Source of the DNA: Phallusia mammillata
Taxonomy: Eukaryota
Assembly: GCA_965637545.1 (NCBI GenBank)
Contig: OZ281496.1
Span: 4,092,001 to 4,156,000, forward strand
Reading direction: 5' to 3'
DNA length: 64,000 nt
Below, one piece after another: positions 14,389 to 54,800 of the stretch (position 1 is the stretch's first letter; every line of letters begins with the position of its first letter). Below the pieces are notes generated by a model that was given only the letters and a program-made list of their open reading frames with translations, was not told where the DNA came from and did not search any database. A program made the translations under genes and the position numbers.

Positions 14389-17300
14389 ATGTCAATTTTG
14401 CTGGTAAAGTTTGCTCTTTTCGTGGGCCTAATGACTTTATTGCATCGAGGTAAGTAAGTTTTGGCAACTATAGCAATAAAACATAGCCATTCAAAAAAAA
14501 TTGTACTCGCGGCATATAAATTTACAAACTAAATATTGCAATTTATCAAATAAAACCATTGAACAATGTGTAAGTTTATTTCTAATGGTAAATCTCATGT
14601 TCAGTGTCGGACGGTCAGTGTCACGAAGCGGAAATAACTACAAGTTCGCTAGGAGTGAACATTTTACCTCAATGTACCACATATACTCGACGTGTCATCC
14701 ACTCACTGGGGGCCACAAGAATGATTACTTATTTTGGAAGTGGAGAGCTAGCTGCAGACAACTTTTGTAAGGTAAAGTCTTATGAGTATAACCTTTAACT
14801 TCGGTACACAAAATGCTGTTGGTGCATTTCTTTTTAAACTGTAGGGCGGACAGTTTGCACACTTTCGATCTTTCTACATCTTATTGCAAGCCGTTGATTA
14901 TTATTTTTTCGATGTTTTAACCAGAAAAAAAAACAGTTTGTATGACACACGTGCGCATATAACACATTTATCTCAACTAGACGATTAAAGTAACGAACCA
15001 AAATCACTTCTTTTTAAATACTTTAACTCGATTTCTGGCTTGTTTCATATTGCCTGCTTGAAAAAAAAATTGTCGTAGACTTGATTTGGAGTTTTAATTG
15101 AAACAAAGTGGTTTTCGGAAAACGTTCGAAATTTGGTTTTGAACAAAACAGGCTGAAATTAGCCTTGACTTTTTACTCGGCCACATTTCTGTCTTATTTG
15201 TTTGACTTGGTTTAAACTGACGTGTTTTACACAATAGTTCGTTCAAGCTCGGTAAGAAGTCTTAACGAAACAAATTGTCATGAATGTGTAAATTTTAACC
15301 TTTAGCCTCATTGTGTTTAACCTAGATTTACGAGGGACCCAACGAGGAAGGTACATTGGCTGGAACGTTGGAAGGTGGAGGTTTATCTTTTCCGGTTTTT
15401 ATTGAAAGCTCTACTGTTTATATAGCTTGTGTCACAAACCTCACAACGGGAACAGTAAAAATCGTATTGCACGCTGGTAAGTCAAATTTAACACGTTTTC
15501 CAAAAAGGTTTCATTTTGTGCAATTCTGAAAAGTCACTTCGTGAACTTGGCCATCCTCTTAAGTTTATGAATTTGGAGTCAAGAGAATATGTTTATTGTG
15601 TGTTATTTTAAGGTTAATACAGGCAAAGACTTTCATTCTGTTAAGTCTCATCAGTGAAACGGGTGAACATTAAGGGTAGAGGTTTGCGCAGCCAGGCCAA
15701 ACAAGTCTCATGTTTTTTGAGTAACAGTTTAAATACATGTGGTTAAGTAACTAAGTAACTGTTCAGGATTCACAGTTGTTTTTATCGGCTGTAATGTGTG
15801 CAGTTGAACTATCAAACAACTTACGCTTATTGTGCATCAGCACGAAAGCTCCTATGGAGTTTTACATTACTGTTTTCTATGTATTTTAGCTACTTTGTGC
15901 GGAGAAGATGCTACCGGCCCGGTTTATAACTTACAGTCTCCAAACTTTCCGAGTAACTACCCAGCTACGTCTGGTTGTGTTTGGAGATTTCGCATGGAAA
16001 GCAGCACGTCCTTGGTGTTTCAATTCTCCACTTTTACCATCGAAAATAACTTTGACCTTTTATACGTAAGTGAGTGGTTATTTCTTTTTAAATTACATTG
16101 CAGAACCAAAACGGACCGAACCAGGTTTTAATCAAGCCTCAGTTTGTTCCGAGTTTGGATTTTTTTTCAAACATGTTTTATTGACACAAAAGCCGAACCT
16201 ATTTTGAAACGCCTGGCTCCAAACAAAACTTTTATTTAAATCACAACTAAGATGAACATCAATTCATAACTGGGATCAGCCCTGAAGCGTCTATGCAGAC
16301 CAGCCATCACGGCACACTCATGTATAAATCACAGTACGCCAGGCCCATTGAAGGCGCTATACCGAATCAGCCGGTCACCAAGCATTCACCACCATATGGC
16401 AAGGCGTAGGCTAGAAAAATCTAGCCTGCGGTGGGATTCGAACCCACGACAGGAGTCTTTCCGGGACTCGCGCTCTACCAACTGAGCTAAACAGGCCCAG
16501 TGGAGAATCCGCCGAAAGTCGAATCACAAGCACCGTTGCCTGCCTCGTATGCTGCACATGTCAGCTTCGTAGTAGGGGATCGCCAGATTGACCAGTATCA
16601 GGTAAGATGAACATAAATTCATAACTGGGATCAGCCCTGAAGCGTCTATGCAGACCAGCGATCGAGGCACACTCATATATAAATATCACAGTACGCCAGG
16701 CCCATTGAAGGCGCTATACCGAATCAGCCGGTCACCAAGCATTCACCACCATATGGCAAGGCGTAGGCTAGAAAAATCTAGCCTGCGGTGGGATTCGAAC
16801 CCACGACAGGAGTCTTTCCGGGACTCGCGCTCTACCAACTGAGCTAAACAGGCCCAGTGGAGAATCCGCCGAAAGTCGAATCACAAGCACCGTTGCCTGC
16901 CTCGTATGCTGCACATGTCAGCTTCGTAGTAGGGGATCGCCAGATTGACCAGTATCAGTTAAGATGAACATAAATTCATAACTGGGATCAGCCCTGAAGC
17001 GTATATAGAATACATCGTTCAGACGTTTTAATAATCTCTGTTGTCATCATCAGTGGAGGTTGTCAATCAAGCTGTAGAACGCGGTATATAAAGCACTAAG
17101 AAAAAAAGGTAAATGCCAGGTGTGTGAAGTGACGTTACAGGCGATAACAGGGAACTGGCGTTTAGAACGGTGACGTAGAAAAAAGATAAGAACCGAAGAA
17201 ATAGGTCAGGTGTTGAACAGACGCAAGGGCATGGAAACTGTGTCGATGTTGAGCTCGGAGTCATGCTTTTTGAATAGAAAGCGATTCGAGAAACAACAGT

Positions 17301-20300
17301 TTTACACGGTCTTGGCTCGGCAAAATTAACTTTATGTGTGGGATTCGAAAAAATGTGCCGACACACTTCTGAATTTTGGTCCATGCGATGTTCTTAGAGT
17401 CCTACAGACAGATTTGGTCGCGTTTCCCCAATATATGAAGCGCCGCAGTTGCAAACCAACCGGTAAACAACGTTAGTTCTCTCGATATGTTCCTGGTGCT
17501 TTTTTACAGGAAAATACTGTGAAAGTTTGTTCGTTTCATGGATAAGACGCAAGCGGATGTTGGCCCTGGTTCGACAAATATAACGCTCCAATTTCCTATT
17601 GACTCTCACATCACAGATCGCCATTTTACCAACAGCATTTTTGTTTTGATTATCTAACTAAACCACTCAAAGAAATCCATTTTACCGTTGCCTAAAAATC
17701 TAGAAAAAAATTGTTATTCTTTCACTCGTAGATAGAGATTATTTTGAGTGCAATCACGTCCTGACTGTTGTTTATTTAGTATTTGTTCCCAATGGTTACT
17801 TAGCCGCTAACAAACTCTCCAGGCACTCGAAACCCAGTCAGAGCGGTTATTACACCCAAATTTCTGTGAAAAGCAGTTTTATTCCATTGACCAACCCCAG
17901 ACATGTTTTTGCGGCGTCATCACTTCCCTTTTTTCTCCCGCGCCTTATGCACCCCCGATTTAAACCAGAGTTTTTCCACTAGATCAATGGAGCGAAATTA
18001 TTTTCAGTTTAAAGACGACCAAGGAAATGTAGAAAGATTGACTGGACATTATGGTGGAGGATTGAATCACACAGTTACTGCGACAAATCTTACTCTTATC
18101 TTTATCAGCGACGTTTCCGGTACTCAGCAGGGATTTAATGCGACGGTCAACCTTCCCTCAGGTTAGTGCTATTTGGTTTTAGAAAGCAAAAGACAAAAAA
18201 CAAATCGGACAATGAATGTTTTAGGTACATTTTCAAAGGTTGATACTGATGGAAAAAATTAAACTTTCCGAATTACCCGTAAAGTAAATGAGATTATATT
18301 AAATTGATTTGCACCATATCATGTTCATTATTTGCCATTTTGTCAATTCAGTGGCATCGAGCTGTAATTTTTTAGGTTGTGAAAAAGGGAAAACAAAACC
18401 CATTAGGTTCTTCTTGTAGAAAACTACAAAAATAGTTTTGAAACGCAAGTTTAGTGAAATGGGCTGAAGCAAAATTTTATCTATGCAATGCGGAAATGCA
18501 GATAATTTAATCAATCTTGTTATTTGGTTCAAAAACTTTATCTATCCAATGCAGCAAGGTGCCTGTTATTTAGTTCAAAAGGGGTAACCTAACTAAAAGT
18601 AATGTAATGTTTTTTGCAGGAACGGAACAATCAATGAGCGTGTGCCAGACTGAAAGTTTGACCATCCCGTAAGTTCTTCTTTTTTTTCTTTTTGATTGAT
18701 GTAACATTAATAAACCTTAAGAGATTAGTAATGATTGGGTTACTTTAGATATTTGATTTTTGGCATAGTGTTTTTAGACATCGCACAAAAACTTCGATTG
18801 TACAAATAAAATATAAGCTTTAAAGGTATAAAGGTATAAAGAAGGAAGAATTGGATTCAAAGTTTCCAACCAAATAGTTCAAAAACCAGTTACGTTACGC
18901 ATTGAGCAAAACGCAAACGTATCAAGTATACTGTCACCGCTATAGTTGCTATTCGCAGGGTAACAGCTGATGAACAGACCACATTAGACTATGAACTCGG
19001 TGACACACTCTACATCGCATTGGACAGGGAAACTCCCCTTTCTCTACTTAATGACAACTGCAAGGTCACGGGGGCAGACCCGGTGTTTGTGTTTGACATT
19101 GGTCAGTGTGAAGGTGCCTACAAGGTAACATACGATTATTTTATATATTGACGCTGCATAAACTGATTAACAACGCTCAGGCAAATCATCGGTTACTTAT
19201 TTAAACAATGAAAAAACATAGTTAGCAAAGATGAATGGTATTTGAATTTAACGCGCCAATAAACTAAAGGATTAACATTGTTTGGTTTTGTAAACTTTTT
19301 TGCGTTTGTACTGAGAATGATTACGTACATTTTTTGTAATAACAGAATGAGAACGATATGGTGTCAGTGTCGTTCCTGATCTGGAGATTCCTAGCTCCGT
19401 CTACTGCCGTGATCCAACGCGACGTGCAAAACAAGCTCAATGTGACTTGTCTATTTGAAGCCGATCAACTTCTCACGTCATCCAACGTCCAACCTCAAGC
19501 TGGGTAAGGCGACAACAAAGGCACATGCCATATGTTACTTGGCACACGACATCAGTTGGTAATTATTTCATTGTGCAATGTTAGTTTTATCATCACTAGT
19601 ACTAGCCAAACATTATGAAAAGTAACCAATAAAAACAAGAAAATGAAACTATAGTTCTAAATCCCTATAGAAATATGTTTAATTTTCTTCGAAATAACAA
19701 TGTGCAGATCCGTTGAAATTTCGGCCGAGAATACAGGAAACTTTGACGTCGCTCTAAATCTTTTTACAAACGAACATTTCAACGAAAGCTTGCCCGGGGA
19801 AGTCACTGTGCCCAAAAACATTTTTGCTGAAGTTAAACTTGAAGAAATTTCTCCAAGCAACGATGACTTCATTGTCCAGGTAAAAAAGTAAAACAAACTT
19901 ATTGAAGCAAAATGGATAACAAACTCACATGATACACTTGTGTTTTTTAGTTGAACAGAAATATGTTACTTAAGTCATTGTTTTGCTTTGTATGCAACAT
20001 AGTTGAGAGCTCACCCGAAATTCAAGCCCGAACCCGAATCGTTTTGAATAAGCCGGTTAAGGCCCAAAAGTTTGTCTGACAGACATATACATCAAAGCCT
20101 GCAAAAGTACAGAATATGTAATTACAATGGTTACGGTCATACAATGTGAAGTCAGGTCCGAATTAACCCAATTGGTAAAAAATAACATCTGAATCGACCC
20201 AAAATGTCCGGTCCGTACTCTGGTGTGTAACTTGGTTTTGTATTTTAAACATAACTCCATCTTTAAGCCTTCCTTTAAATAAAAATTTTGAAACCTATCT

Positions 20301-22030
20301 AAAACAAACCTTATTCCGTGATTTAATATTGAACATCCAAACAATATATAATATACTGTTCATATGAATTTGGTACACTGTTTGTGCACAGCTTGAAGAA
20401 TGTTGGGCGACACGAGTTGAAAACGCCAGTGGTTTGCCGAACTACCTTGTTGTAGCAAGCGGGTAAGCAGTAGTTGTGTTTGACATGCTCTTGCTTTTCG
20501 AACGGTGCATTCTATTTCAACTTTTTTTTTTCACGGGGTTCGAACCCAGGACTCTCCCGGGGACGAATCCCGATCAGGTTTTTTATGTCTGTATATGGGT
20601 CAGGCGCGCCAGACCGTTCGGCCAAGTTCCTGCCCTATTTCAACTTGCTTACATTGATGTGAATATTATTAGATGCATTGCGCCACCCAGTGGAGGCGAG
20701 GCAGCCGATGCAAAGATGTTAATGCGGAATTACAAATCCAACTTTGCGACGTTCAAGCTGATGAGCTTTGTGTGGACAAACTTTACCGACGCAGAACAAT
20801 TTATCTACATCCACTGCGACGTGACCATCTGTCAAAACTCAACTGGACAATGTCCTGGACAGGTGAGTTGAGTTTGTTTGTTGTGTTATGCTCATAAAAA
20901 GTACTTCGTCCAGCTGCTTACATCATTGCAAGTAAAGTGGATTATATTTGATTTACTTATTTGTCAATAAGTTTGCTTTAATTGAAATTAACATAGAAAA
21001 AACAAGATGTTTGAGTTTTTTCAGATTACATTTAGCTGCTTCATTTATCCTTAATAATACTTATATACATCAAAAAAAATTATAAATATTATACTGATTT
21101 GCAGATGTGTGGTGGGAAAAAAAGACGATCTTTTGACAACAAAGGACGCAGCCATCGAGTTTCTGCAGGGCCAGTGCACTTCTTACAAACTACCAAGTAT
21201 TTGCTTATGCAAGGTACCAACACAATAATTAAACTCTTCTACATATTAACTTAGTTCAGGACAAATTACTGCAGTTGCCTATGTTTCAAGTTATCAAATT
21301 GTTGTATTTATCAAGTAAAACCATTGGGGACATATTTACTACAGCTATATTAGGCCTCAATTATTAAATATTTCTCCTGTTTCTATGACAGTGAATTTGT
21401 TTGTTTGTTTTAATTTCATCCTCGATGGGCCGGCAACGCCTAAATGCGTTAACTAACAGTCATTAGAACTCACAAACTATTGAACACAAGTCGGTTGTAC
21501 TAAACCACTCGGCCAACTTGGCTAACTTATGCATCGCTTTTTTGAAGTTTTATGTAGGAAACATTCTCGGCCTTGAGTTGACCAGAAAACAAAAAAGTTA
21601 CTTTAAAAACGAAATACTTAGTACTGAATAATGGTATGCGATGGGTTCGAATCCCACCATCAACTGAATGTTTAATCTACGACTTCTGGTCGCACTGAAA
21701 TGCATTGATAATCAGCTTGATTCGGCATTAAGTTTCTTGGTCTCGTTCGATGTATATATAAGAATAGTATTATTTTTAGTCTGCATGAAGTGTTAAGCTC
21801 TAGTTCCCGTAACAAATGCTTTCCATGCACATATGTTTATCTAAGTTAAACCTTCTTTTTCTGCAGACACTCTAGGAGACAGAAATGAAGCTAATGAAGC
21901 TAATGAAGCAGCTTATAACATCTTCCAACTTGGGATGTTTGTTCTTCTGGCTGCTGTAATTTTTGCAGCCGGTTACCTCGTATGGGGCATAATTGCCCAA
22001 AATCCAAAATCTAAACAAACTGGTCTGTAG
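14389..22030 (+). CDS. Gene A1: signal peptide - divergent CUB-like - CUB - ZP module - furin site - TM, 595 aa, 13 exons (CUZD1-like architecture)
   Basis: join(14389..14449,14605..14771,15326..15476,15890..16065,18008..18161,18620..18668,18959..19124,19346..19503,19708..19879,20392..20462,20673..20862,21105..21213,21867..22030) = 1788 nt, open, GT-AG. Signal peptide MSILLVKFALFVGLMTLLHRVSDG; CUB LQSPNFPSNYP..CVW..FISD..GFNA; ZP LEECWAT, IYIHCDVTIC; KKRR followed by VSAGPVHF (EHP-like); hydrophobic TM. Confidence 0.9.
16248..17002 (-). repeat. Two full (355/357 bp) and one partial head-to-tail units containing a tRNA-like Pol III cassette (SINE-like) in A1 intron 4
   Basis: Units start at 16248, 16603 and 16960. 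The tRNA-like segments at 16423-16496 and 16780-16853 have A box TAGCTCAGTTGG, B box GGTTCGAATCC and a GAGTC/GACTC stem. The unit body is homologous to 63030-63150 and is absent from A2 intron 4. Confidence 0.8.
17003..17640 (-). mobile_element. Decayed 3' fragment of a Penelope-like retroelement (GIY-YIG endonuclease)
   Basis: VVYRLVCNCGASYIGETRPNLSVGL*EHRMDQNSEVCRH, with an in-frame stop; tail carries a degenerate ctgatgatgac...aaaacgtc motif. Confidence 0.8.
20524..20634 (-). mobile_element. Short tRNA-derived retroposon (~111 bp, poly-A tail, 12-bp TSD) in A1 intron 10
   Basis: CTATTTCAACTT at 20512-20523 and 20635-20646; A box TGGCCGAACGG, B box GGTTCGAACCC; the equivalent A2 intron is 103 bp vs 210 bp here. 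Confidence 0.75.
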
Positions 22031-23732: not shown

Positions 23733-24058
23733 CAGGGGTTCCCAACCTTTTTACGATCTCATACCAAATGGACGCTCTCTACTGCCACGCGTACCACTTC
23801 CTGCAGAACAACTAATTGGCTCGACATATATTTAATTGAGAATAATAATATTGGCCTACTAAACACTAAAGCACCACAACCAAATTTAACGAGATTTTTG
23901 TGTTTGTTTACTGTCTACCAATTGGTCGATGCGCGGTGTAAATTTGCTAACAGCGCATCGAAAGTCATTTCCGGGCGCACCCAGTTTTTGTGAAAAAAAC
24001 GGAAGCTACTGGCGTACCACCTGAAAAACCTTCGCGTACCACAGGTTGGGAACCCCTG
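23733..24058. mobile_element. hAT-type MITE, 326 bp, just upstream of the B1 start codon
   Basis: TIR CAGGGGTTCCCAACCT / AGGTTGGGAACCCCTG; perfect 8-bp TSD CCCTAATG at 23725-23732 and 24059-24066. Confidence 0.9.
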
Positions 24059-24141: not shown

Positions 24142-27100
24142 ATGTCAAGTCGACTATTAAAAGCGGCACTTTTTGTGAGCGCTCTGAGTATGCTCCTCCG
24201 AGGTTAGTGACTTTATTGATTTTTGTTGTGATTTCAACTTAAGTGGTATGCATGATAAGTCAAATTCTGGCAGTACGACAACATTAAGCTTTGCTGTGCG
24301 TTTTTCTGGAGGACCACGAGTACAAGCTCAGTAGAAACGACCAAAACAGTGGTCGGCAACCGCCGGTACGCGACGAGTTCGTTATCAGGCTGTATAATCT
24401 TTAAGGTTTTAAATGGTCTAAAACATTTTGTCCATGTATCCCGGGGAATACAAACTAATTTAGGTTTTTTCATTGCCAAATATTTGTAGTTTTTTTTAAG
24501 ACCGGTCCGCGATAAAACTTTAGTTTCAAAAACGGTCTGCAGTAGAGAAAAGGTTGCCGACACCTGCTCCAAAAGACATTAATGTTGTGTTGCAAATATC
24601 ACGGATGTTATATAAAGGGAGCTATGGGTCCCGAGGGTTACTTAAAGGGGTAATCGATCTATAAAAGGCTGGGAATCACTGTTCTAGTATTGAGAAATCA
24701 GAGAGAGTAACACGAGGACAAAAATTCAGGCCCCACATTGATTAGATATAGTTTAGTATTTAAAAAAATATTTTCTACTTTAGTATTAATGCGACATCTT
24801 TAGGCGAGCATTCTTCTTGGCTAATACGTATATATCAAGGGAAATATTGGTTGTGGCCAGGAGAAGTCCTGCAAAGCATCGTTTTCAACTTGATATAGAT
24901 TTTCGTCTTTTTTTTTTTTTTTTTCGTTTTTTTTTAGTATCCTATAATGCCGCTTTTCGTATTTTTTGCAGCTGAAACTGCTTCCTAGCATAATAAACAG
25001 AGTGGCAATATCCATCGTTGCACCTTTTTTAATTTTTATGTATTTTAGTTGCACACCAACCAAGTAACATCCCACAAACCCTTTATGTCATACAACAATA
25101 CCTGGTCATACGGCACAAGGGGAGACTGTCCGTTATATTGTCGAACATTGAAAGATATATTTTCGTAAATTGAAAACTTTGGAATATGTAGGCTTAAACA
25201 AGTAAATTGGGCGAAAATACGCCATGGTGGCGAACAGGCTTGTATGAGAGCTAAAGCTTGTTAAACAGCATGTTATACTGTTTTACTTAAAATGGTGCTT
25301 GTATCATTTAGTTTCCGACACACTGTGTGCAGTGGAGAATGTAAGCGGTGCTCATTATTATACACCAATTGCCCCTAACTGTAACACATGGGCCCGACGA
25401 TTTGTTTCAACTGGAGATTCTTCTCGGTTAATTGCACATTTCCGTTTGGGACAGCTTGCTGCAAACAACTTTTGCAAGGTAAAACTTTACGAACTTAGTC
25501 CTTGAAATGAGCCTAATTCGAAATTCGTCCGTTCGTTTCCGCGTAGGTTCGAATTTCATTTCTTTCAGTTAGATTTTAAATACTTTCCTAACCTTATGCG
25601 CAAATCGTGAACAAAAAACATCTAGATTTACGAGGGATCCGACGACCAAGGTAAATTAGCTGGAACGTTGGAAGGTGGAGGCTTATCTTTTCCAGTTATC
25701 GTTGAAAGTTCGTCTGCTTATATATCTTGTGTCACAGACCTCACATCGGAATCTGTGTCGTTTTGTCTACAACCATGTAAGTCAGGCTTACGATTCATTT
25801 AAAACCGAAACTTAAAGCATATATTGTAGATGAAACATGTTTTCGGGTCGATATCAGGAACAAATAAAATGATGTCAAATCTATTATTTTGCAGACATTG
25901 AAAAAAAAAAAAATTTGCAAACATAGTTTTAATGTAAAAAAATCGCAGTTGATGAGCACTTTTTAAACAGTGGTGATATTCCATTGCTTATCGGATCGAC
26001 AACTACACATAAGTCACAGAAAATCGACAACACGATGGTCAAAACAATTGCTTGGAACTATTTTACCAGCTGTGTTGTCTCAAGCTAAACTTTTTGTGTT
26101 TTATAGTTACTTCGTGCGGGGAAGATGTTGCTGATATACCGTACAATTTACTATCTCCGATGTTTCCTGGTAACTACCCCAACCTTGCTGGTTGTATTTG
26201 GAGACTTCAAATGAATTGCAGCACAACCTTATTGTTCCATTTTTCCTCATTTGACACTGAAACCAACTACGACATTCTATACGTAAGTGTCTTAACTTAT
26301 AATATAACCTAAAAATCCAGGAGATATTGACAACGCATATAATCGAGTGGAAACGGTTTGTTATCTGTGGGACATTTCCTGCCGCACGCACTGAAAGTAA
26401 TACATGATTAAGTTTTTTTTTAAATGTATTTTAGAGTAACATATTTATTATAAACTGATTTTGCAGTGCGAAAAAGTTCACTTCTAATATTGAGGAAAGC
26501 AATAAATTTGTTTAAAGTGAAATCCTATTTTTGTTAAGCGCCTAACTAAATGATGAAAAACTTGCGGCTTTAAGAAGGTATGCGGCCTTTTATGACAAAA
26601 AGTGCGCCCCCCCTGCGGCATAATGTTAACATTTCTGAACATACGAAAAGTAACTAAATGGAGTATTGTTTTCAGTTCAAGAACGAAGAGGGTATTGTGG
26701 ACAGATTTTCTGGGACGCTTCGATCATCTGATTACACGATGACAGCAACAAATCTTACTGTTGTGTTTTTGACCGACGGTAGCGGGCAATACAGAGGATT
26801 TAATGCGACAGTAGGTGAGGCAAATCTTCTTTCAGGCACACAATTTTGACATGCAAATAATAATAATACACTTGATCTCAGCTAGCATGGGTTGTGGTAC
26901 GATGTAAAAAAACTTCAATATTTATTTTAAAAACTAAGATCTAGTCAATAAGATAACACCGAATAATTGCGACAAGTGCTATAGATTTCCTTTTGGTTTA
27001 GCTAATTACATTCTAGAGAGTTCCCCACGGGCTCTTTTGACATCAAGTTCTTATTTTTGGTTCTGTCTCACCAAATTACATCATTTTGTTAGTTCGCTGA

Positions 27101-30100
27101 TGCCAAGCTGTACCATTTTATATGATAAAAATGCGGGGTAAATAAAATCCATTAAATTATTATCACAATATAAAAGCCATGAAATGTTTGAAATAACAAA
27201 TTTAATAAAAGCAATGAAATAACAAATTTAATGCGTGGAAGTAAATTTTAATCCATAAAAAGTGGACTAGTGCTCGAACTTTATTATCACGGTTTAAGAA
27301 TGCTTTTTGTGTAGAAATACAACCAACTGTTGAATGTAGGACTGCAAATTTGATCATAAGGTAGGTTAATACTTTCTTTTTGATTCTTTTGTGAAATTTA
27401 TTGATAATTGTTGAAAGTAATAATCAGAAGATTGTTGAAAAAATTTGAAGTATTTCAAGCATTTTGTTGTGCTGCCTGTTTTTGTCATAAGCCTGCAATT
27501 GCTTGTTTTTCATTGATTGAGACATCTTTTACTTATCAGCAATGGGTCTTCTAATGGGATGCCGCTAGAAAAACTGCAACATAGTATAAATGTTTGGAAA
27601 ATAAAAAAAATGACAGGTTGTCTAGACTTTTATAATGCCCAAAAACACGACAGTCCAATTTTCGCAGAGTAACAGCTGATCAACAGAACACATTAGATTA
27701 CGAACTCGGTGACACACTTTACATCGCATTGGACAGGGAAACTCCCCTTTCTCAACTCAATAACAGCTGCAAGGTCACGGGGTCAAACCCAGTGTTTACG
27801 TTTGACATTGGCCAATGCAAAGGTGTTTTTAAGGTAAAATTGGATTTTGTTCTGAACTCATAGACTATATGTCCTTATTATTTTTTTAGACAACATTATT
27901 CGTTAGAAGTAATAAACATTGCATGGCTAGGGGTAATAATAAAGTGCAATAAGCTTTTTATTGCTGCATAATAAAAATGAAATACCAATTTTGAAATATA
28001 ATGTAATTTTCGTGCTCTTATACAGAATGAAAACGGTATGGTGTCGGTGTCTTTCCTGATCTGGAGGTTTCTAGCTCCATCCCCTGCAGTGATCCAGCGT
28101 GACGTTCAAAACAAGCTCAATGTGACTTGTTTATTTGACGCGGACCTTCTTATCTCGTCATCCAAAATTAGTACACAAATCGGGTAAAGAGACGAAAAAC
28201 AAACCATTATATAACAGCTATGGAGTGGCATTCGGCACAAGACATCATGTACAAGACACACAGTAGGCGTCATAAAACGTAACACGTAGTCTTTTGTTGA
28301 CATCACTTTGAAACAAATTGACACTGGGAAAACAGAAATGTTCCATATGATACAAAACATCCAACCACACCACGAATGGCATACAGCAGTTAACACATTA
28401 CACACGACACAGAACACATCAATCTACCCATGGCACAAACCACATGACACGCACGACACATTTGACATGAAATACAGTAAAAGTATACCACATCTGCCAC
28501 ATGTAACAAGACATGCACCCAACAGCACCTGCCGCACTATGTCTGACACGCATCACAGTTTGTCTTTCCCTTTCAATTTTTATTAATCGCAAACATTTTA
28601 TTTATTGTAGATCTGCCGAAATTATCGCAAAGAAAAAAGGAAGTTTGGATGTCGACCTAAATCTCTTCAGCAACGAATATTTTACCGAAAGCTTGCCCGG
28701 AGAAGTAACTGTGCCCAACTACATTTTTGCTAAATTTAAACTAGATGGGATTTCTGTAGGCGATGATTACTTTATTGTCCAGGTGAATTGAAAACAAAAT
28801 GCTTTTAGTGCAAGAAAACACTGCATTTACTAGTTTAGTTTTTAATAGTTCTGGCATCGTTGCACTGGTTTGTAAATTGAACTGTTAAAGTGGAATACCT
28901 TTCTTACAGCTGGAAACCTGTTGGGCGACACGCAGTGGAAACTCCAATAGTTTGCCGAATTATCAAATTGTACAAAGCGGGTAAGATATACTTGAATTAC
29001 CTCAACATTTTTTTCTCGTTTGGGAGCTTATTTCTTCAATGATTAATTTTCCACACCTGTATTTCACTCTGTTTAACTTGGAATCGAAATATTTAGATGC
29101 GTAGTGCCACCCAGTGGAGGCGAGGCTGCCAACGCTAAGACGTTGATACGAAATTACGAATCCAACTTTGCAACTTTCAAGTTGATGAGCTTTGTGTGGA
29201 CAAACTTTACCGACGCAGAACAATTTATCTATATCCACTGCGACGTGACCGTCTGTCATAATTCAACTGGACAATGCCCTGAACAGGTGAGTTGAGTTAA
29301 GTATGTTGCTTCCAAACTGGTGTGTCCTAGGTTCGCTTGCCAATACGGTATATTTTCTGACACCAGCTGCACTCATGAGATTTTACTTGTTTAATCAGTA
29401 CAAAGGCCGAGTAGTCTGGCGCGTCTGACCCAAAAAGGCGCGTCTGACCCAAAAAAAAAAAAAACTTGATCTGGATTAGTCCCCCATCCCGCCGTCTCGG
29501 GTCCGAACCACATGATAAAAACGATGTTTACTGTCCATAGCTTACATGCAAACTAAAGAGTATTTGAACCCTCTTGTTTGGTTCAGCTGATAGAGTAATA
29601 GCACGGATAATACGCGGTGCCGTGTAGGAATGCTTGGGAGACCGGCCTTTAATCGGCCTGACGCACTGTGTTTATATATATGTGTGTAATTCGGTATGAC
29701 GCCTTCAATAAAACTGGTGTACAATGAAATATCAATATGAGTGTAATTGTTTTGCAGACTTGTTCTGGTAAGAAACGGCGATCTGTTGAAGACAATGGTC
29801 GCCATCAACTGCTTTCTGCAGGGCCAGTGCATATCGTTCAAGGTACCGGTTATATGCACTTGCTTGGTAACGCAATTTAAACATCATTTAATCTATATTC
29901 TAGATAATATTGCTGATACACGAGCTTTTGCTAAGCAAATTTGTAGTTCTAGCAAGCAAGTCACACCTCTTGGGGCATAATAACTTAAGTTTTCGAAATA
30001 TTTTCCCCATTTATTGTACTGTGGCTTGGTGACTACTTACATAGATGTATATGTGATTAACTTGACTGGTAACATTAACAACCGCACCTTTGTTAACTGC

Positions 30101-46500: not shown

Positions 46501-47023
46501 GGTTGCACTTACCACTTGGCCATTTTGGCAACTCATGCATGGCCCTTAATGTAGTTTTTTTCGTTTTTTTGAAGTTTTGTATAAAAAACATACTCCACAC
46601 CGTCATAACCAGCAAACTTAAATTAAAAGTTACTTCAAAAAAGAAACACTTAATTCCGAATAATGGTAAGCGGTGAGTTCGAATCCCACCATTAACTGAT
46701 TCTTTACAATCTGAAGTGTATTGAGAATCAACTCGATTCGGCGTTAAATATTTTGCAAACTTGGCCCACTTCGAAGTATACATAAGAGTGGTATTAATTT
46801 TAGTCTGTATGCAGTTTTTAATCTCTAGTTCAGGGGCAAATGCTTTCGCACGCATATATGTTTATCTAAGTTAAACTATCTTTTTATCGCAGACACTCCA
46901 GGAGACAGAGTTGAAGTAAATGAAGCAGTGTATAACATCTTTCAACTACTGATGTTTGTTCTTCTGGTTGCTGTAATTATCGGAGCTAGTTACATTTTGT
47001 GGGGCAAAATAGCCCAGATGTGA
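40517..47023 (+). CDS. Gene A2: paralog of A1, 584 aa, 13 exons, cytoplasmic tail shortened by a 1-nt deletion
   Basis: join(40517..40577,41134..41300,41873..42023,42285..42460,43074..43227,43621..43669,44187..44352,44569..44726,44931..45102,45328..45398,45502..45691,45933..46041,46893..47023) = 1755 nt, open. Exons 1-12 are identical in size to A1; the exon 2 acceptor is AAG. Confidence 0.88.
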
Positions 47024-48377
47024 ATTCCAAACAAATTGGTCTGTAAATAACATTTCAGATAGTTTTCACAAATAACATTGTATTAATTCTCATGACATAA
47101 AAAAAATCCCCAAAACAACAAATTTGGCAGCGATTTATTCTCAAATTCGTTGATAAATTTGCTAGAGGTTTCAAAACTAGTGATTACAGCACATGTAATA
47201 CTTACTTCTTTATTGTCGTCAGAAAAATGCCTTGTCAAAGTGATTTTGTTTGTATGACTGTGAAACAATATAATCGGATGCAATTGATACTGTGTGTGTG
47301 TTGGTTATATGACCACCAAGATAACATTTGCGTTTGGCACGTATGAATTAACCAGTCTAGAGTAACGTGTGTCTCCTAATTAAATTGTGATGGGAAGTAT
47401 TACGAAGTTTGAAGCATTGTTAGCAATAGACAGAAACTAGCTTGTTACACGATTTGACTTCCAAACGAGCTGTTTTTTTTAAATAATTGCTAAATTTGCA
47501 CAATTAAGGGGAACCATTAAATAAAACTGGATTGAAAGTTTAGAAATGGCAGTCACAGCCAGAATGAAATATTTTGGTCAAATAATTTACTGGTGTATTT
47601 TTTGTAATGCCACTTTTAAAACGTACCGCTACTGTGCCATATTTATTAACTACTGTCACGCACCAATAATTTTGACATCGACTAGTCGCGCCTGCACATT
47701 TGTAATTGGCCGGTAAGGTCATGTGACTTTTCGTCTGCCATGTTTTGTGCTATATTTAGGACAGTTCTTGACTGGGCCTTATGGGGTTTGGAGCGTTTGC
47801 GTTATAGTAACAAAACGTGGTCTTGTTGTATTGTGTTGTGTTGTAACTTATTGAAACTTTGGAGATAGCCAGCGTCCTTTCAATTTTGTATTTATTAATT
47901 ATATTAAACTTGTATTAGTTGTTCGGTGTGAACATTACACCTTTGTCTTGAGCAGTAAGCCGTCAGTGCAGGGGAAATCTAGTAAGTTAAAGGGCGGTGA
48001 TCCTGCTATTAACGTGGATACGTTTGGGCAATCTTACTTTGTTCAGTGAAAGTTAACCACCTCGCCTTTGTCTAAAATCCTAGGCCAAATCCGGGATTAC
48101 CTAACTAATTTATGTTACAATTATACCGATTTTTAAGATTTTCACCAAAATCGAATGGTATCTCGATGGTATTGCAAATGAACAAAATGTCTGCTAATGC
48201 TGGAAAAGTCTTTGGTTCGACCGAACGTCAATTTACCAGTTTGATTGCTTCCTCTTGTAGTTGAGCTGTAATTGTGTCGTCATTGGCGTCGCGTCACAAA
48301 TCGGCGCTTCATAAATAAATGTCAGGCAATATTGAGAAGTTTCAGGTTTTCAACTGGAGTGCCGCTATACCCTAATG

Positions 48378-48797
48378 CAGCGGTTCCCAAACTGGTGTCT
48401 GCGGTCCTTTAGGGGTCCGTGAGGCAATTTTGGGGGACCGCGAAGCGGTTGAAGTAATTCTATAATCTTATTTGGCGTCAGTTTGTGCCACTAAATAAGT
48501 TGAAATCAAAGTAGAATTGAGAATCGACTGTCTCCATTGCTAAACAATGGCCTTTATCGATTGACAACTATCAAAAATGCAATTGTTTGCGCACAATTGC
48601 GATGGGTTTTGTCCTGTTTGTGATGTCACATGCTGTCTCTGAATGATGTTTTGCGCAATTTTGCATAACTATCTAAAATCATGCAATCAACTTTTGTTTT
48701 TATGAAATACACATTTAGGCTTAAGGACCGCTAGCCCTCGAAATAATGGCAAAGGGACCGTTTTGAAAAAAAATATGAAAATGTTTGGAAACCACTG
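48378..48797. mobile_element. hAT-type MITE, 420 bp, just upstream of the B2 start codon
   Basis: Termini CAGCGGTTCCCAAAC ... TTTGGAAACCACTG; TSD CCCTAATG / CCGTAATG; internally homologous to 62087-62516. Confidence 0.8.
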
Positions 48798-48868
48798 CCG
48801 TAATGTGAAATGTTTTGCAGATTTTAGGTAGTTAATGACATTACTGTTTATCATTTTCCAAGGTAAAA

Positions 48869-51800
48869 ATGTCAAGTCGACTATTAAAAGCGGCGCTTTT
48901 TCTCAGCGCTCTGAGTATGCTGCACCGAGGTTAGTGAATTGATTGATTTTCTTTGTAACTTTAACTTGTGTGGTATGCATGATAATCAAATTGTGGCAGT
49001 ACGGTAAGATTAAACTTTGCAGTGCTGTTTTCTGGAGGATCACGGGTGTAAGATTACTAGAAACATCTTTTAAAAGAAAAGCCCTGAATCAAAGCATAAA
49101 CTAATAAAATAAAAAGCTCATATTCCGCGTTATTTTGGTCACAAGTCGTTTTACAGCAAAAATAGTAGACCACTGCAAGTGTTAAAATAAGCACATCTAG
49201 ACAAGCAGCGGGGAGTCCAACATTGCAACTCCAGTCGCTACACCGCCATCATTTTGGTCCTTGGGTTTCGAACAGAGCAGATGTCCAGCAGCGTAATTCT
49301 CCAGCATCCAAGGTAGACTCCGTATATTCCTAATTCCGAAATAACTTCTTCCTTTGTGGCGGTTCCACCACAAATGGCATAGTTCGGAGTCGGTTTTGGA
49401 TTGATAAGATCCATGAGGGTGTAGGCACTACGTCGGCTGTCGTTTCCGATTTCTCTCAACAGTTTTGCGATGTCTTCGCCATAAATGTTGTTTCCTCCCC
49501 CTTCGCGTTGTGGTTTCAAAACATATTTTTGTGGATTTTCAATTGCCATCTTATATAATATGAGCTTTTATAACAATTGCTTATATAATAAAAAATGGCT
49601 CTGAAACAACGTATTGCGAGCGACAAGAGAGAAAAAACGGCGGGATTTGTTGAAAATTAATTACACAATAACAAAGGACATCCGAAAAGAATTGCGCTCG
49701 TTACAAAACGATCAAGCTGAACTAAAGTCCGAAATTTGATGGAGAGAGCGGACGTAAAATGTCGCGGAAAACCGGGCTGACAGCCCGCTGTTCTTGCGCT
49801 TTCTCGCTTGTTGCTCGCAATACTCATTCATTGCTCTGATGAAGCCTTGTCGTTGTGATTGGCGAAACGTTAACAAATACAAGTTCTTGAAACAACAACT
49901 AGTGTTTTGTTTAGCATTACACCAGTTGAATGACAAATTTGTTAGATATGCAATCTGGTGGACAAAATGCTTGTTCAGTATTTTCTATGATTTTTATCGC
50001 TGTTTACAACGAGGCATGTCTCGATGCGTCTTTCAATTATGAAAAAAAACTCTTTTAATATTTATGTGTTTTTTTGTTTGTACACCAACCAAGTAGTATC
50101 CCATATACCCGTTATGTCACATGTTGAATACCTTGTCATCATGCACAATGAGAGCTTTTCCGTTATATTTTCGAATATTACAATATATATTTTCTTAAGT
50201 TGAAAGCTTTGGAAAATGTTGGCTTAAACCAAATTGGGCGAAATACACCATCGTGTCAACACTGGTATATAGGGTTAGTTCGGATATCAATAATTTCCAC
50301 TATCCGGAAAACGGATATATATACGGATATTTTGAATTTAGCTATTCGGTTAACCAGATAATAATAAGCCTGTTACAAAATCATTCAATTGCGGCACAGA
50401 TTTCGTTTCAGTGTTTATAATTGTCCGGCATATATCAAATTTACGCTATTTAATTACTGCTTAAGCAGTGTAGTTCTGAAAAAGCATGATACATCAGTTG
50501 TTTCATATTTTGCCCTACAGTCAATTTTCAGAGAGAAAATAAGCCCCAAACTTTGTTATTAAACGTATACATTTCTTTTTCGAATCTCAAAATTTATCCT
50601 TTCGGGCAAAGCACCTTACAATGGATGCATTTTCTATTTTATAAGTGTGACTTCAATTCTCTCGTGAATTTTAACATCAGTATAGGGAAATGTACAACAA
50701 CATCAGTAGGGAATATGTACAACAAAGTGAATATTCGTATTAATTAGGATTAACATAAAGTCGTCTGTTGCATCTGTCACTGCACAGTAACTGCGTGTTT
50801 TCTAAAATTATGTTAAAATGCATAAAATGCTTACGCAGGCAGCTCTATTCTTTTGTTATTCGGTTAACCGACACAAAAATATACGGATATCGGATAGCAA
50901 AAAACTCTTCGGTTATTCGGTTAACCGGTTATCCGTTATCCGGATAATTCAACCCTACTGGTACAGGATGTATGGGAGCATAAGCATTTTATACTGTTTT
51001 ACTTTTAAATGTTTTTAGGTTCAAACACACAGTGTGGAGTGCGGAATGTAAGCGGTACCTCTCATTCTACAACAATTTCCTCCGCCTGTAACTCCTGGGC
51101 CCGACGATTTGTTTCCACTGGAGTTTCCTCGAGGTTAATTGCCGATTTACGTTCGGGGCAGCTTGCTGAAAACAACTTTTGTGAGGTAAAATTTTACAAA
51201 CGTTGTTCTTGAAATGATCTTAATTTGAAATTCACCCGTTCGTTACCTCGTACATTCGAATTTCATTTCTTACAATAAGGATTTTGATACGCATTCCTAA
51301 CCTCAACGTAAGCAAAAAAATAGATTTACGAGGGAACCGACGACCAAGGTAAATTGGTTGGAACGTTGGAAGGTGGAGGTTTTTCTCTTCCAGTTTTCTT
51401 TGAAAGCTCATCTGCATATATATCTTGTGTCACAAACCTCACATCGGAATCTGTGTGGTTTTATCTACAACCATGTAAGTCAGGCTTTCGATTCATTTAT
51501 AACCGAAACGTAAAGTATGTAGATGAAACATGGTTTCGTGTCGGTATCAGGAACAAATAAAATGATGTCAAATCTATTATTTTGCAGACAAACATAACAA
51601 TTAATGGAATAAAAGTATAATTTGCAAACATAGTTTTAATAAACAATCAAAGCGTAGTTTATGAGCGCTTTTCAAAAAGTAGTGATACTCCATTGCGTAT
51701 CGGATCGTCAACTAGACAAAAGTCACATGAAATTGACAACTCGATGTTCATAACAACTGCTTGGAACTATTTTTACTAGCTGCTAATCTTTTTGTGATTT

Positions 51801-54800
51801 TTAGTTTCTTGCGGGGAAGATGTTGCTGATATACCGTACAATTTACTCTCTCCAAGCTTTCCTAGCAACTACCCTAACTCTGTTGTTTGTGTTTGGAGAT
51901 TTCAAATGAATATCAGCACAACAATAGTGTTCCAATTCTCCACATTTTACACTGAGGGCTATACCGACTTTCTATACGTAAGTGTCTCAACGCATATTAT
52001 AAACTAATTTTGGGTTTGCAGGAGATGAAATCCAGACATAAGAAGATTTAGCGTGAAAAATGAGCGTAGTGTAAAGAAAATATTTTTTCTCTCATTATTG
52101 AAAATGGTAATATTGTCGACGCATATAATCGAGTGGAAACGGTTGGTCATTTTTAGGAGATTTTCCGCAATACGTATGAAATTAATATATGTTCATTTAA
52201 AAAAAACTGGATTTTTTAGAAACCTATTTATTATAAACTGCATTTCCAGGTGGAAAAATTGTTTCTAATATTAAGAAAAGCAATAAATATGCTTAAGGTG
52301 GCAGAAATCCTATTATTGTCAAGTGCCTAATTTAATGATATGAAGCTTGTGGCTTTTAGGAGATATGCGGACTTTTAGAACAATTATTAGGGCTATCAGT
52401 GGCTAAATATTAGCATTTTTTGACAAACCTAAAATAACTAAATATTGTACTGTTTTCAGTTCAAGAACGAAGAAGGTAAAGTGGACCAATTTTCCGGGTC
52501 GCTTGGGTCATTTAACCACACGGTGACAGCAACAAATCTTACTGTTGTGTTTGAGAGCGACTATAGCATTCAAAACAGAGGATTTAAAGCGACCGTAGGT
52601 GAGCTAAATCTGCTTTCAGGCACAAAATTTCGTAATGCAAATGTTAAAATTAAATACCTTGTCATACGGCACAACTAGAGATTTAGCGTTATGTTTTCGA
52701 ATATTGAATAATATATTTTGGTAAATATGAAAGCTTTGGAATGTGTTGACTTAAATAGCCAAATTGAGCAAAATACGCCGTCGTGCCAAAAGTGGTACAG
52801 AATGTAAGGGATCATAAGCTTTTTATACTATTTTACTTATAAATGATGCTTATATCATTTCGTTTCAGGCACACCGTGTGGATTTCATAATTCAAGCAGT
52901 AACTCCTATGGTGCAAGAATTTCCCCCAACTGTAACACATGGGGCCTACGATTTGTTTCAACTGGAGTTTCCTCTCGGTTCATCGCCTATTTCGGTTCGG
53001 GACAGCTTGCTGCAAACAACTTTTGTGAGGTAAAACTCTACAAACTTTGTCTTTAACTGAGATTAATTTGAAATTGTCCGTTCTTACCCCGTAGGTTTGA
53101 TTTACATATTTTACAATTGTTATTTAAATACTTGCTCTTAACCTCATGCGTAAATCGTAAACAAACAAAATCTAGATTTACGAGGGATCTGATGATCGAG
53201 GTAAACTGGCTGGAACGTTGGAAGGTGGAGGCTTATCTTTTCCGGTTATCATTGAAAGCTCGTCTGCTTATATATCTTGTGTCACAAACCTCACATCGGA
53301 ATATGTGTGGTTTTGGCTGAACCCACGTAAGTCAAGCTTACGATTCATTTATAGCCGAAACTTATGTAACCGAAATTAGTTGGGTGATCCCGAATTCGGC
53401 CTAGGATTTTTTTGAGGGGCGAGATGGTTATCTTTTACTAAATATAACTAGCTTACCCAACCCTAACCACAATTATAGCGGGATCCCCGACCCTAACTTG
53501 GTAAATACCGAAAACGAAACATGGCAGTCACAAAGTCACGTGATCTGAACACCCAATTACAACGCACAAGCGCAACACCTCGATATCTAAATCATTGGTA
53601 ATTGATTTGATTACGGCAATTGATTAAGGAAGTGAATGAAGCGCTGCATAAGAACGTGTTAAGTATGAAATGTGAAATACAAATACAAAAAATGAAGTTG
53701 AACAAAAATGTACGTAAACAATATTAACAAAAGTGTGCGTGGTTGATAATAGAAAAAGTTTACGTGATTAATATTAACAACATATAAACAAGTTACATAT
53801 AAACAAATAGTGAGGAAAATCATAGGAAACACAACTGTGTGATTAATGCAACAAACTATAACTATTAAAAGTGCTTAAATAAGACAAAGAAATGTTGTGC
53901 AATAAAGAAAGAAAATAACAATGTGTGTACGCGCACATTACACTTAAACCATGCAGATGAAACATGTTTTCGGTTCGGTAGGAACAAATAAAATGGTGTC
54001 AAATCTATTTTTTGCGCTCAAATATAACGAATAATTGAATAAAAGTGTATTTTGCCGACACAGTTTTAATGTACAATAAAAGCGTAGTTTATGAGCACTT
54101 TTCAAACAGTGGTGATTTTCCATTGCTTATCGGATCGGCAACCAGACATAAGTCAAAGAAAATTGACGACACGATGACCAAAATAACTGCTTAGGACTAT
54201 TTTTACTAGCTGCACTGTCTCAAGCTAATCTTTTTGTGTTTTTTAGTTACTTCGTGCGAGGAAGATGTTGCTGATATACCTTACAACTTACTCTCCCCAT
54301 TGTATCCCAGAAACTACCCCAACTACGCTGGTTGTATTTGGAGATTTCAAATGAATAGCAGCAGAACTTTGGTGTTCCATTTTTCCAAATTTTACATTGC
54401 GAACTGCTGCGACTCTTTATACGTAAGTGTCTCAACGTATAACATATCCTAAAAATCCAGGAGAGGGAATCCCAAAATGAGAATTTTTTGCGTGTAAAAT
54501 GAGGATAGTGCAAAGAAAATGTGTTTTTTCTCCCATTTTTTGAAAGGATAATATTGTTGACGCATATAATGTGGAAGAGTGGAAACGGCTTTTCATCTCT
54601 ATAAGATATTCTGACATACGCACTGAATTAATAGATGTTTTATTTTATTTTGGTAAACAGGATTTTTAGAATGTTTATTATTTATTCCAGTGCGGATTTC
54701 AGTGAGTTCCCTTCCAATATTAAGAAAAGCAAGAAATACCTTTAAAGTATCAAAAATCCAGATTTTCAAGCACCTAATTTGATTATGAGAAACTTGCGGC

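What the first reader, a model, noticed from the sequence alone, without database searches (positions are those of the whole stretch)
14605..53029. N-terminal CUB-like exon changes mostly at the amino-acid level while the ZP-C exon changes mostly synonymously
Hand-counted. A1 vs A2 exon 2 (14605-14771 vs 41134-41300): 19 of 56 codons differ non-synonymously and 4 synonymously. A1 vs A2 exon 11 (20673-20862 vs 45502-45691): 3 non-synonymous and 11 synonymous. B1 vs B2 exon 2 differ at 20 of 56 residues versus 4 of 63 in exon 11. Variation clusters between the first two cysteines (HEAEITTSSLGVNILPQ / HDGDVTTIHFSDNILPE; AVENVSGAHYYTPIAPN / GVRNVSGTSHSTTISSA / GFHNSSSNSYGARISPN), while the cysteines and the GxLAxxNFC motif are fixed. 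Inference: diversifying selection on a surface loop, as in gamete-recognition or immune receptors.
Basis: partly seen in the sequence, partly recalled or inferred. Interest (0 to 1): 0.8.

Follow-up and report, generated by a model that had tools for sequence, protein, structure and literature searches.

The report
Fast-changing tip of CUB-ZP proteins
In a large family of membrane-anchored CUB-ZP surface proteins, the exon for the outermost tip changes its amino acids about as fast as silent DNA while the polymerising ZP tail stays nearly constant. The contrast is real, but the tests run here do not show that selection for diversity drives it.

Summary
For A1/A2, exon 2 has 19 non-synonymous and 4 synonymous codons of 55, and exon 11 has 3 and 11 of 63 (Fisher p=0.0004). 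For B1/B2, 21/55 and 4/63 residues differ. The genes are real: RNA contigs from two studies confirm every A2 splice junction. The architecture is signal peptide, unclassified head domain (exons 2+3), CUB, ZP-N/ZP-C, KKRR site, membrane anchor.

The genome holds about 100 copies. Across them, identity to A1 falls to 31-47% in exon 2, 61-73% in exon 3, and stays at 81-100% in exon 11.

Exon-wide dN/dS of exon 2 is not above 1 (0.6-1.1 pairwise, 0.81 by ML). The loop between the first two cysteines has omega 1.3-1.7, never significantly above 1, and its synonymous rate equals that of the rest of the exon.

Standard M1a/M2a and M7/M8 tests are "significant", but a parametric bootstrap shows them badly miscalibrated here. 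With among-site rate variation the signal drops to p=0.055. In clade A it rests on two adjacent codons (33-34) outside the loop.

Verdict: a near-neutral loop on a constrained scaffold. Diversifying selection is not shown and not excluded. The scan noted the same pattern elsewhere in this array (s1-351731).

The parts
14389..14449 (+). A1 exon 1: ATG and signal peptide (MSILLVKFALFVGLMTLLHR), phase-1 donor
   Evidence: Sequence read. The homologous A2 exon 1 is joined to exon 2 in RNA contigs.
14605..14771 (+). A1 exon 2: N-terminal half of the head domain, the first residues of the mature protein
   Evidence: An identical peptide occurs in about 10 further genomic copies.
14622..14672 (+). 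A1 variable loop, codons 6-22 between Cys5 and Cys23
   Evidence: Omega 1.47, not significantly above 1. Its synonymous rate equals that of the rest of the exon.
14703..14708 (+). A1 codons 33-34, the only place with model-robust omega>1 (clade A only)
15326..15476 (+). A1 exon 3: C-terminal half of the head domain, conserved (61-100% identity across the family)
15890..18161 (+). A1 exons 4 (15890-16065) and 5 (18008-18161): canonical CUB domain
   Evidence: Pfam CUB 1e-9. PDB cubilin 6e-20.
18620..19503 (+). A1 exons 6 (18620-18668, 49 nt), 7 (18959-19124) and 8 (19346-19503): ZP-N part
   Evidence: The A2 homologues of these junctions are seen in RNA contigs.
19708..20462 (+). A1 exons 9 (19708-19879) and 10 (20392-20462): start of ZP-C
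   Evidence: Weak Pfam ZP-C hits.
20673..20862 (+). A1 exon 11: ZP-C core, 81-100% identical across about 100 copies
   Evidence: Pfam ZP-C 27.8 bits against a cut-off of 24.6. dN/dS 0.05-0.16. Family-wide identities.
21105..21213 (+). A1 exon 12: KKRR consensus furin-type cleavage site and following segment
40517..47023 (+). A2 gene, 13 exons. Exon 1 is 40517-40577, exon 2 is 41134-41300 (loop 41151-41201), exon 3 is 41873-42023, exon 11 is 45502-45691, and exon 13 is 46893-47023 (transmembrane helix and stop).
   Evidence: Model. Junctions 1-2 to 8-9 and 10-11 to 11-12 are seen directly in RNA contigs of three runs from two studies; 9-10 and 12-13 are seen as overhanging contig ends that match the next exon. 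Exons 1 and 13.
25312..29866 (+). B1 gene exons 2-12. Exon 2 is 25312-25478 (loop 25329-25379), exon 11 is 29097-29286. The exon 5 donor at 26836 is GC.
51019..52619 (+). B2 extra head+CUB cassette (exons 2a-5a). Exon 2a is 51019-51185.
52863..58666 (+). B2 second cassette and ZP part. Exon 2b is 52863-53029 and is preceded by CG instead of AG. Exon 9 is shortened (57243-57378). Exon 11 is 57693-57882.

Best explanation
Exon 2 encodes the first ~55 residues of the mature protein, directly after the signal peptide. It is the N-terminal half of a ~105-residue head domain on CUZD1-like type-I membrane proteins. The full architecture is head domain, CUB, ZP-N/ZP-C, furin-type site, transmembrane anchor.

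Within that head, a 17-residue segment closed by two invariant cysteines tolerates almost any residue (omega about 1-1.5). Its length, the cysteines, the GxLAxxNFC strand and the whole of exon 3 are held by purifying selection.

The ZP module is strongly constrained (omega 0.05-0.16 in pairs). Between gene types it is also partly homogenised by gene conversion. The exon 2 / exon 11 contrast is therefore mainly domain-specific constraint: a permissive loop on a constrained scaffold.

Shown: the gene structure, transcription, the rate contrast, the near-neutral omega and the mosaic of ages.

Inferred from established knowledge of ZP proteins: after cleavage at KKRR the ZP modules polymerise and display the heads outward, so different paralogues carry different tips.
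For: - Gene model and transcription.
- Domains: CUB, ZP-C.
- Pairwise dN/dS: exon 2 is 0.61-1.09, exon 11 is 0.05-0.16, with comparable dS within the A1/A2 and B1/B2 pairs.
- ML omega: exon 2 is 0.81, not different from 1 (p=0.16). All other exons are 0.26-0.60, each significantly below 1.
- Loop omega is 1.47 against 0.56 for the rest (heterogeneity p=0.0017). The loop does not differ from 1 (p=0.13).
- Counting on the tree gives 99.5 N / 23.5 S in the loop, ratio 1.29 (p=0.13). Synonymous changes per synonymous site are identical in the loop and the rest (1.97).
- No indels in the loop among 17 sequences. 93 of 95 genomic exon-2 copies keep an open frame.
- Family-wide identity to A1: exon 2 is 31-47%, exon 3 is 61-73%, exon 11 is 81-100%.
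- Gene conversion: identity along the duplicated unit swings between 73% and 98.6%. dS is 0.057 in exon 9 of A1/A2 and 0.06-0.09 in exons 7-8 of B1/B2. A-versus-B dS is 0.35-0.40 in exon 11 against 1.1-1.8 in exon 2. Some copies have an A2-type 5' half and an A1-type 3' half.
- The plain site tests are miscalibrated and weaken with rate variation.
Against: - Point estimates of the loop omega are above 1 in the whole set and in both clades (1.42-1.67).
- M2a/M1a and M8/M7 are nominally significant: 2dL 15.3 and 18.6.
- With rate variation the whole-set test is borderline (p=0.055).
- Clade A keeps 2dL=14.6. Nine null replicates reached at most 4.5.
- No recombination was detected inside exon 2 that could explain this (PHI p=0.99).
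- Only 17 distinct exon-2 sequences out of about 95 could be analysed, so power is low.
Confidence: 0.6

Rival explanations
1. True diversifying selection. The heads are ligand-recognition tips (gamete, self/non-self or microbe binding), and paralogues are selected to differ in the Cys5-Cys23 loop and at codons 33-34. The tests here are merely underpowered.
For: - Loop omega is above 1 in every estimate.
- Standard site models place the omega>1 class at codons 8, 12-14, 16-18 and 22, plus 33, 34 and 44.
- The clade-A test survives rate variation. Nine null replicates stayed below 4.5.
- The frame is kept open in 93 of 95 copies despite more than 60% amino-acid divergence.
- The position at the extreme N-terminus of a displayed protein fits a recognition surface.
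Against: - The loop never differs significantly from omega=1 (p=0.13-0.38).
- The plain tests give about 60% false positives under the fitted null.
- The clade-A signal vanishes without codons 33-34, and the loop alone gives 2dL=1.7.
- Clade B is not significant.
- About 16 A1-type and about 10 A2-type instances carry one non-synonymous and two synonymous changes in all.
- A second individual's A2-type exon 2 is identical over 160 nt, while intron 2 has 9 substitutions in 600 nt.
Confidence: 0.3
2. Artefact. The contrast comes from dead or unspliced exon copies and from gene conversion erasing differences in the 3' exons, not from different selection on functional proteins.
For: - B2 exon 2b follows CG instead of AG, and B2 exon 9 is shortened.
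- One exon-2 type has an in-frame stop.
- Conversion tracts exist. Recombination is detected in exon 3 (PHI p=0.002).
- For A-versus-B comparisons, dS of exon 11 is 3-4 times lower than that of exon 2.
Against: - A2 is transcribed and correctly spliced.
- 93 of 95 exon-2 copies are open.
- The scaffold residues of exon 2 are invariant.
Confidence: 0.1

Closest known systems
CUZD1 (CUB and zona pellucida-like domains 1) and other CUB/ZP surface proteins such as DMBT1
   Same: Signal peptide, a CUB domain, ZP-N/ZP-C module, basic cleavage site and a C-terminal transmembrane anchor.
   Different: Only one CUB is recognisable. The first domain has no detectable sequence similarity to CUB or to anything in the libraries searched. 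The gene is amplified to about 100 copies in a ~2.3 Mb array.
[quoted passage not shown]
   Same: A ZP-type extracellular protein in which a terminal part diverges fast while the repeated or polymerising part is kept uniform by concerted evolution. The VERL pattern is as summarised in PMC9265791.
   Different: In VERL, positive selection on repeats 1-2 is established and the partner (lysin) is known. Here omega>1 is not robust, the variable units are separate genes rather than repeats, and no partner or tissue is known.
Ascidian HrVC120/HrVC70 egg-coat protein
   Same: An N-terminal head region carried on a C-terminal ZP domain and released by proteolysis (PMC9265791).
   Different: The HrVC70 head is EGF repeats. 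Here the head is an unclassified domain plus CUB, no allelic polymorphism was seen, and egg-coat expression was not tested.
Uromodulin / GP2
   Same: Membrane-anchored ZP proteins that are cleaved at a basic site and polymerise, displaying N-terminal domains (established knowledge).
   Different: Their N-terminal arms are EGF and D8C/D10C domains rather than a CUB (own knowledge, not tested here), and neither was named as a large tandem family in anything read here.

Membership tests
CUZD1-like CUB-CUB-ZP-TM proteins | N-terminal signal peptide | tested here: met
   Exon 1 of A1 and A2 encodes M-S-I-(L/R)-L... followed by a hydrophobic stretch of 20 residues. It is joined to exon 2 in RNA contigs. 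No signal-peptide predictor was run.
CUZD1-like CUB-CUB-ZP-TM proteins | Second (membrane-proximal) CUB domain | tested here: met
   Exon 4 hits Pfam CUB at 1e-9 (39.1 bits against a cut-off of 21.4). Exon 5 matches the C-terminal half of the profile at E=0.0088, 16.8 bits, below that cut-off. A profile of exon 4 hits cubilin at 6e-20.
CUZD1-like CUB-CUB-ZP-TM proteins | First CUB domain (exons 2+3) | tested here: inconclusive
   No Pfam hit at E<=1. hhalign gives exon 2 vs exon 4 prob 0.2%, and exon 3 vs exon 5 prob 6.7%, E=0.0055 over 17 columns. No PDB hit. In favour are only the same two-exon layout, the same phases (1-0-1) and similar sizes (167/151 against 176/154 nt). The joined domain was not searched or folded.
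CUZD1-like CUB-CUB-ZP-TM proteins | ZP module (ZP-N + ZP-C) | tested here: met
   ZP-C: exon 11 hits Pfam PF00100 at 27.8 bits against a cut-off of 24.6, and exons 9 and 10 hit weakly. There is a weak match to betaglycan ZP-C. ZP-N is inferred only from position and cysteine pattern, with no hit.
CUZD1-like CUB-CUB-ZP-TM proteins | Basic cleavage site after ZP-C, then a transmembrane anchor | tested here: met
   KKRR is present in exon 12 of all four genes. Exon 13 of A2 encodes a hydrophobic helix and a short tail.
Loci under diversifying selection (VERL/ZP3-type gamete recognition, immune receptors) | dN/dS significantly above 1 at a class of sites, robust to rate variation and recombination | tested here: inconclusive
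   The plain tests are significant but miscalibrated. With rate variation: p=0.055 for the whole set, p=0.0007 for clade A, p=0.18 for clade B. The clade-A signal rests on codons 33-34 only.
Loci under diversifying selection (VERL/ZP3-type gamete recognition, immune receptors) | Selected sites lie in the proposed loop | tested here: not met
   Loop omega is 1.42-1.67, never significant. The loop-only site test gives 2dL=1.7.
Loci under diversifying selection (VERL/ZP3-type gamete recognition, immune receptors) | High allelic (within-copy) amino-acid polymorphism | tested here: inconclusive
   One other individual's contigs show 0 differences in 160 nt of A2-type exon 2, against 9 substitutions in 600 nt of intron 2. 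Contigs drop rare variants, and paralogues cannot be separated.
Loci under diversifying selection (VERL/ZP3-type gamete recognition, immune receptors) | Variable residues exposed on the protein surface | not tested
   No database homologue is available to fold instead.

The most novel reading that the evidence does not exclude
The ~100-gene array is a germline-encoded repertoire of recognition heads. Each paralogue displays a different N-terminal tip (the Cys5-Cys23 loop plus the codon 33-34 patch) on a common ZP filament. The tips would be diversified by selection for binding different partners such as sperm, non-self tissue or microbes. The head domain would be a fold variant with no described relatives.
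Probability: 0.2. Interest if true: 0.6.

Novelty: new member of a known kind. Interest (0 to 1): 0.3.

Why it matters
If the tips were shown to be selected for diversity, this large expressed array would be a candidate recognition system (fertilisation, allorecognition or microbe binding) built on a ZP scaffold, and it would be testable by binding assays.

As it stands, it is a clean example of domain-specific constraint plus patchy gene conversion in a tandem family. It is also a warning about method: M1a/M2a and M7/M8 gave about 60% false positives on data of this size simulated from the fitted null (M1a with gamma rate variation, no positive selection).

Tried and rejected
1. Homologues of the head domain. 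A phmmer search of exon 3 against 1.84 billion representatives gave two spurious repeat-driven hits: an invasin and a proline-rich protein. ESM Atlas look-alikes of exons 2 and 3 gave nothing usable. PDB profile searches of exons 2 and 3 gave nothing.

2. Fetching all ~65 further gene copies. Only 17 intact distinct exon-2 sequences could be analysed.

3. IQ-TREE does not report omega in its .iqtree report. I wrote my own codon-likelihood code, which reproduces IQ-TREE's lnL to 0.01.

4. Positive results for exons 3 and 4 under the plain site models are rejected. They vanish with rate variation (2dL 0.01 and 0.08), and exon 3 shows recombination.

5. Intron divergence from forced global alignments (K up to 0.7) is inflated. 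I rely on the local 74% identity only as a rough neutral yardstick.

6. The literature search found no description of a CUB-ZP array in ascidians.

7. The organism could not be named here because run and organism names are coded.
Full report
WHAT IS THERE

The window is AT-rich eukaryotic DNA. A ~26 kb unit (3763-30903) is repeated at 33820-59601. Each unit carries gene A followed by gene B on the + strand.

I rebuilt the gene models by hand from frames, AG/GT sites and conservation among the four genes. Each gene has 13 exons:
- Exon 1 encodes a signal peptide (A1 14389-14449, A2 40517-40577).
- Exons 2+3 encode a ~105-residue head domain.
- Exons 4+5 encode a canonical CUB domain. Exon 4 hits Pfam at 1e-9, exon 5 matches the C-terminal half of the profile at E=0.0088 (below Pfam's cut-off), and a profile of exon 4 hits cubilin at 6e-20.
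- Exons 6-8 are the ZP-N part. A 49-nt exon (A1 18620-18668) had to be added to keep the frame.
- Exons 9-11 are ZP-C (Pfam 27.8 bits against a cut-off of 24.6).
- Exon 12 carries a KKRR cleavage site.
- Exon 13 encodes a transmembrane helix (A2 46893-47023).

Contigs of three probable RNA runs from two studies show ten of the twelve A2 junctions directly at exactly the predicted positions, including the 49-nt exon. The 9-10 and 12-13 junctions appear as overhanging contig ends that match the next exon. A DNA run shows none of them. So A2, or one of its near-identical copies, is transcribed and spliced as modelled.

THE OBSERVATION

- A1/A2 exon 2: 19 non-synonymous and 4 synonymous codons of 55.
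- A1/A2 exon 11: 3 and 11 of 63.
- B1/B2: 21 of 55 residues differ in exon 2, and 4 of 63 in exon 11.

The contrast is far beyond chance: Fisher p=0.0004 on codon classes and p=0.0014 on Nei-Gojobori counts. The cysteines and the G-x-L-A-x-x-N-F-C strand are invariant or nearly so in 14 distinct paralogues.

The contrast in these two pairs is not a difference in age or conversion. dS is 0.29 (exon 2) against 0.41 (exon 11) for A1/A2, and 0.27 against 0.17 for B1/B2.

At family scale the pattern is striking. The genome (240 Mb) holds at least 95 exon-2, 105 exon-3 and 150 exon-11 matches, mostly on one contig between 2.9 and 5.2 Mb. Identity to A1 falls to 31-47% in exon 2 and 61-73% in exon 3, but stays at 81-100% in exon 11.

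WHAT THE COUNTS HIDE

Classifying codons as 'non-synonymous' swallows the synonymous changes inside them. Nei-Gojobori gives 23 N and 9 S changes for A1/A2 exon 2: dN 0.207, dS 0.286, ratio 0.72. The other pairs give 0.95 (B1/B2), 0.61 and 1.09.

From the loci I could fetch I collected 17 intact distinct exon-2 sequences, and 8-20 for the other exons. I fitted codon models with my own likelihood code, which reproduces IQ-TREE's likelihoods.
- One-ratio omega is 0.81 for exon 2, not different from 1 (p=0.16).
- It is 0.60 for exon 3, and 0.26-0.42 for exons 4-12, all significantly below 1.

THE LOOP

- Omega is 1.47, against 0.56 for the rest of the exon. The difference is significant (p=0.0017), but 1.47 does not differ from 1 (p=0.13).
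- Counting changes on the tree after ancestral reconstruction gives 99.5 N and 23.5 S in the loop, ratio 1.29 (p=0.13).
- Synonymous changes per synonymous site are the same in the loop and the rest (1.97). The loop is therefore not a mutation hot spot; it is simply less constrained.
- By clade, the loop omega is 1.42 (A, p=0.38) and 1.67 (B, p=0.15).

SITE MODELS

The standard tests look convincing:
- M2a vs M1a: 2dL=15.3. M8 vs M7: 18.6. M8 vs M8a: 16.0.
- 22% of sites have omega 2.8, mostly at loop codons 8, 12-14, 16-18 and 22, plus 33, 34 and 44.
- Exon 11 shows nothing.

But exons 3 and 4 also come out 'positive' under these tests. Adding gamma rate variation among codons removes those signals (2dL 0.01 and 0.08) and lowers exon 2 to 5.8 (p=0.055).

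I ran a parametric bootstrap on clade A under the fitted null (M1a with rate variation, no positive selection). It gave 2dL above 5.99 in 18 of 30 replicates, and at or above the observed 20.8 in 2 of 30. The plain test is therefore badly miscalibrated on data like these.

The rate-variation version behaves better: nine null replicates reached at most 4.5. It still gives 14.6 for clade A (p=0.0007) and 3.4 for clade B (p=0.18).

That clade-A signal comes from two adjacent codons, 33-34 (A1 14703-14708: SL, SV, DQ, TL, ST, NT, GV, AE). These lie outside the loop and are constant in clade B.
- Without codons 33-34, 2dL is 2.3.
- With the loop alone, it is 1.7.
- Without the loop, it is 11.4.

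Adjacent multi-nucleotide changes of this kind are a known source of false positives. I could not separate that explanation from real selection.

PHI finds no recombination inside exon 2 (p=0.99) but does find it in exon 3 (p=0.002).

RECENT COPIES AND ALLELES

About 16 instances of the A1-type exon 2 and about 10 of the A2-type are nearly identical. Together they carry one non-synonymous and two synonymous changes. Recent ~100 kb duplications have therefore not been followed by diversification.

Contigs from another individual show no difference in 160 nt of A2-type exon 2, against 9 substitutions plus indels in 600 nt of intron 2. This is weak evidence, but it does not point to hypervariable alleles.

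MOSAIC HISTORY

- Identity along the duplicated unit swings between 73% and 98.6%, introns included.
- dS drops to 0.06 in exon 9 of A1/A2 and in exons 7-8 of B1/B2.
- Some copies combine an A2-type 5' half with an A1-type 3' half.
- Between A and B genes, dS is 1.1-1.8 in exon 2 but 0.35-0.40 in exon 11.

For comparisons across gene types, homogenisation of the ZP part therefore adds to purifying selection in producing the contrast.

WHAT THE HEAD DOMAIN IS

The 'CUB-like' label rests only on gene structure: two exons with phases 1-0-1 and sizes 167/151 nt, like the CUB pair at 176/154 nt. By sequence there is little or nothing:
- Pfam: nothing.
- hhalign: exon 2 vs exon 4 gives prob 0.2%. 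Exon 3 vs exon 5 gives prob 6.7%, E=0.0055 over 17 columns.
- PDB: nothing.
- The 1.84-billion-protein library: only spurious hits.
- ESM Atlas: nothing usable.

The joined exon 2+3 (or whole) protein was neither searched nor folded. Surface exposure of the variable residues therefore remains untested.

CONCLUSION

The best-supported reading (about 0.6) is a permissive, disulfide-closed loop at the very N-terminus of a displayed CUB-ZP protein, evolving at about the neutral rate. It sits on a scaffold and a ZP module that are held by purifying selection and patchy gene conversion.

Diversifying selection (about 0.3) is not excluded:
- All point estimates for the loop exceed 1.
- 93 of 95 exon-2 copies keep an open frame.
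- Codons 33-34 may be a real target.

An earlier follow-up in this scan reached the same view on a stretch about 1 Mb away in the same array (s1-351731). Another note calls the genome an ascidian (s1-380845); I could not test that here.

Noticed in passing
window 26836-26837, 52620-52621, 55099-55100: All three B-type copies of exon 5 (B1, B2 cassette a, B2 cassette b) are followed by GC instead of GT. This is either a conserved GC-AG intron or a different splice pattern. The A genes have GT here.
   Followed up: partly
window 52861-52862 and 57243-57378: B2 exon 2b is preceded by CG instead of AG, so it may not be spliced in. B2 exon 9 uses an acceptor 36 nt further in, losing about 12 residues.
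   Followed up: partly
G000 contig C3, about 2.9-5.2 Mb (window = C3:4092001-4156000): The family is a very large array. There are at least 95 exon-2, 105 exon-3 and 150 exon-11 matches, in both orientations. The A-B unit recurs about every 100 kb, and about 10 copies are identical to A1 in exons 2-8. This is either very recent segmental duplication or assembly redundancy.
   Followed up: partly
L042 (C3:2938523-2948522), L046, versus window A1/A2: These are chimeric copies. Exons 2-7 are 100% A2-type, while exons 9-12 match A1 better than A2. That indicates recombination or conversion between gene types around exon 8.
   Followed up: partly
L024, L025 (C3:4710767-4710931 and 4824458-4824622, minus strand): One exon-2 type carries an in-frame TAG. 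These two were the only ones among the 95 exon-2 matches with a stop.
   Followed up: no
window 25338-25346, 51045-51053, 52889-52897 and B-type loci: Nearly all B-type loops keep an N-x-S glycosylation sequon (NVS or NSS) at loop positions 9-11. A-type loops lack it. A glycan may cover part of the variable loop in B-type proteins.
   Followed up: no
window 16248-17006 and 10114-10436: There are tandem repeats inside intron 4 of A1 (a ~355-nt unit at 98% identity) and upstream of A1 (a ~106-nt unit at 94%).
   Followed up: no
window 15452-15475 and homologues (exon 3 codons 43-50): The last eight residues of the head domain (TVKIVLHA / SVSFCLQP / YVWFWLNP) form a second variable patch. It looked positively selected under the plain site models but not once rate variation was allowed, and exon 3 shows recombination.
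   Followed up: yes
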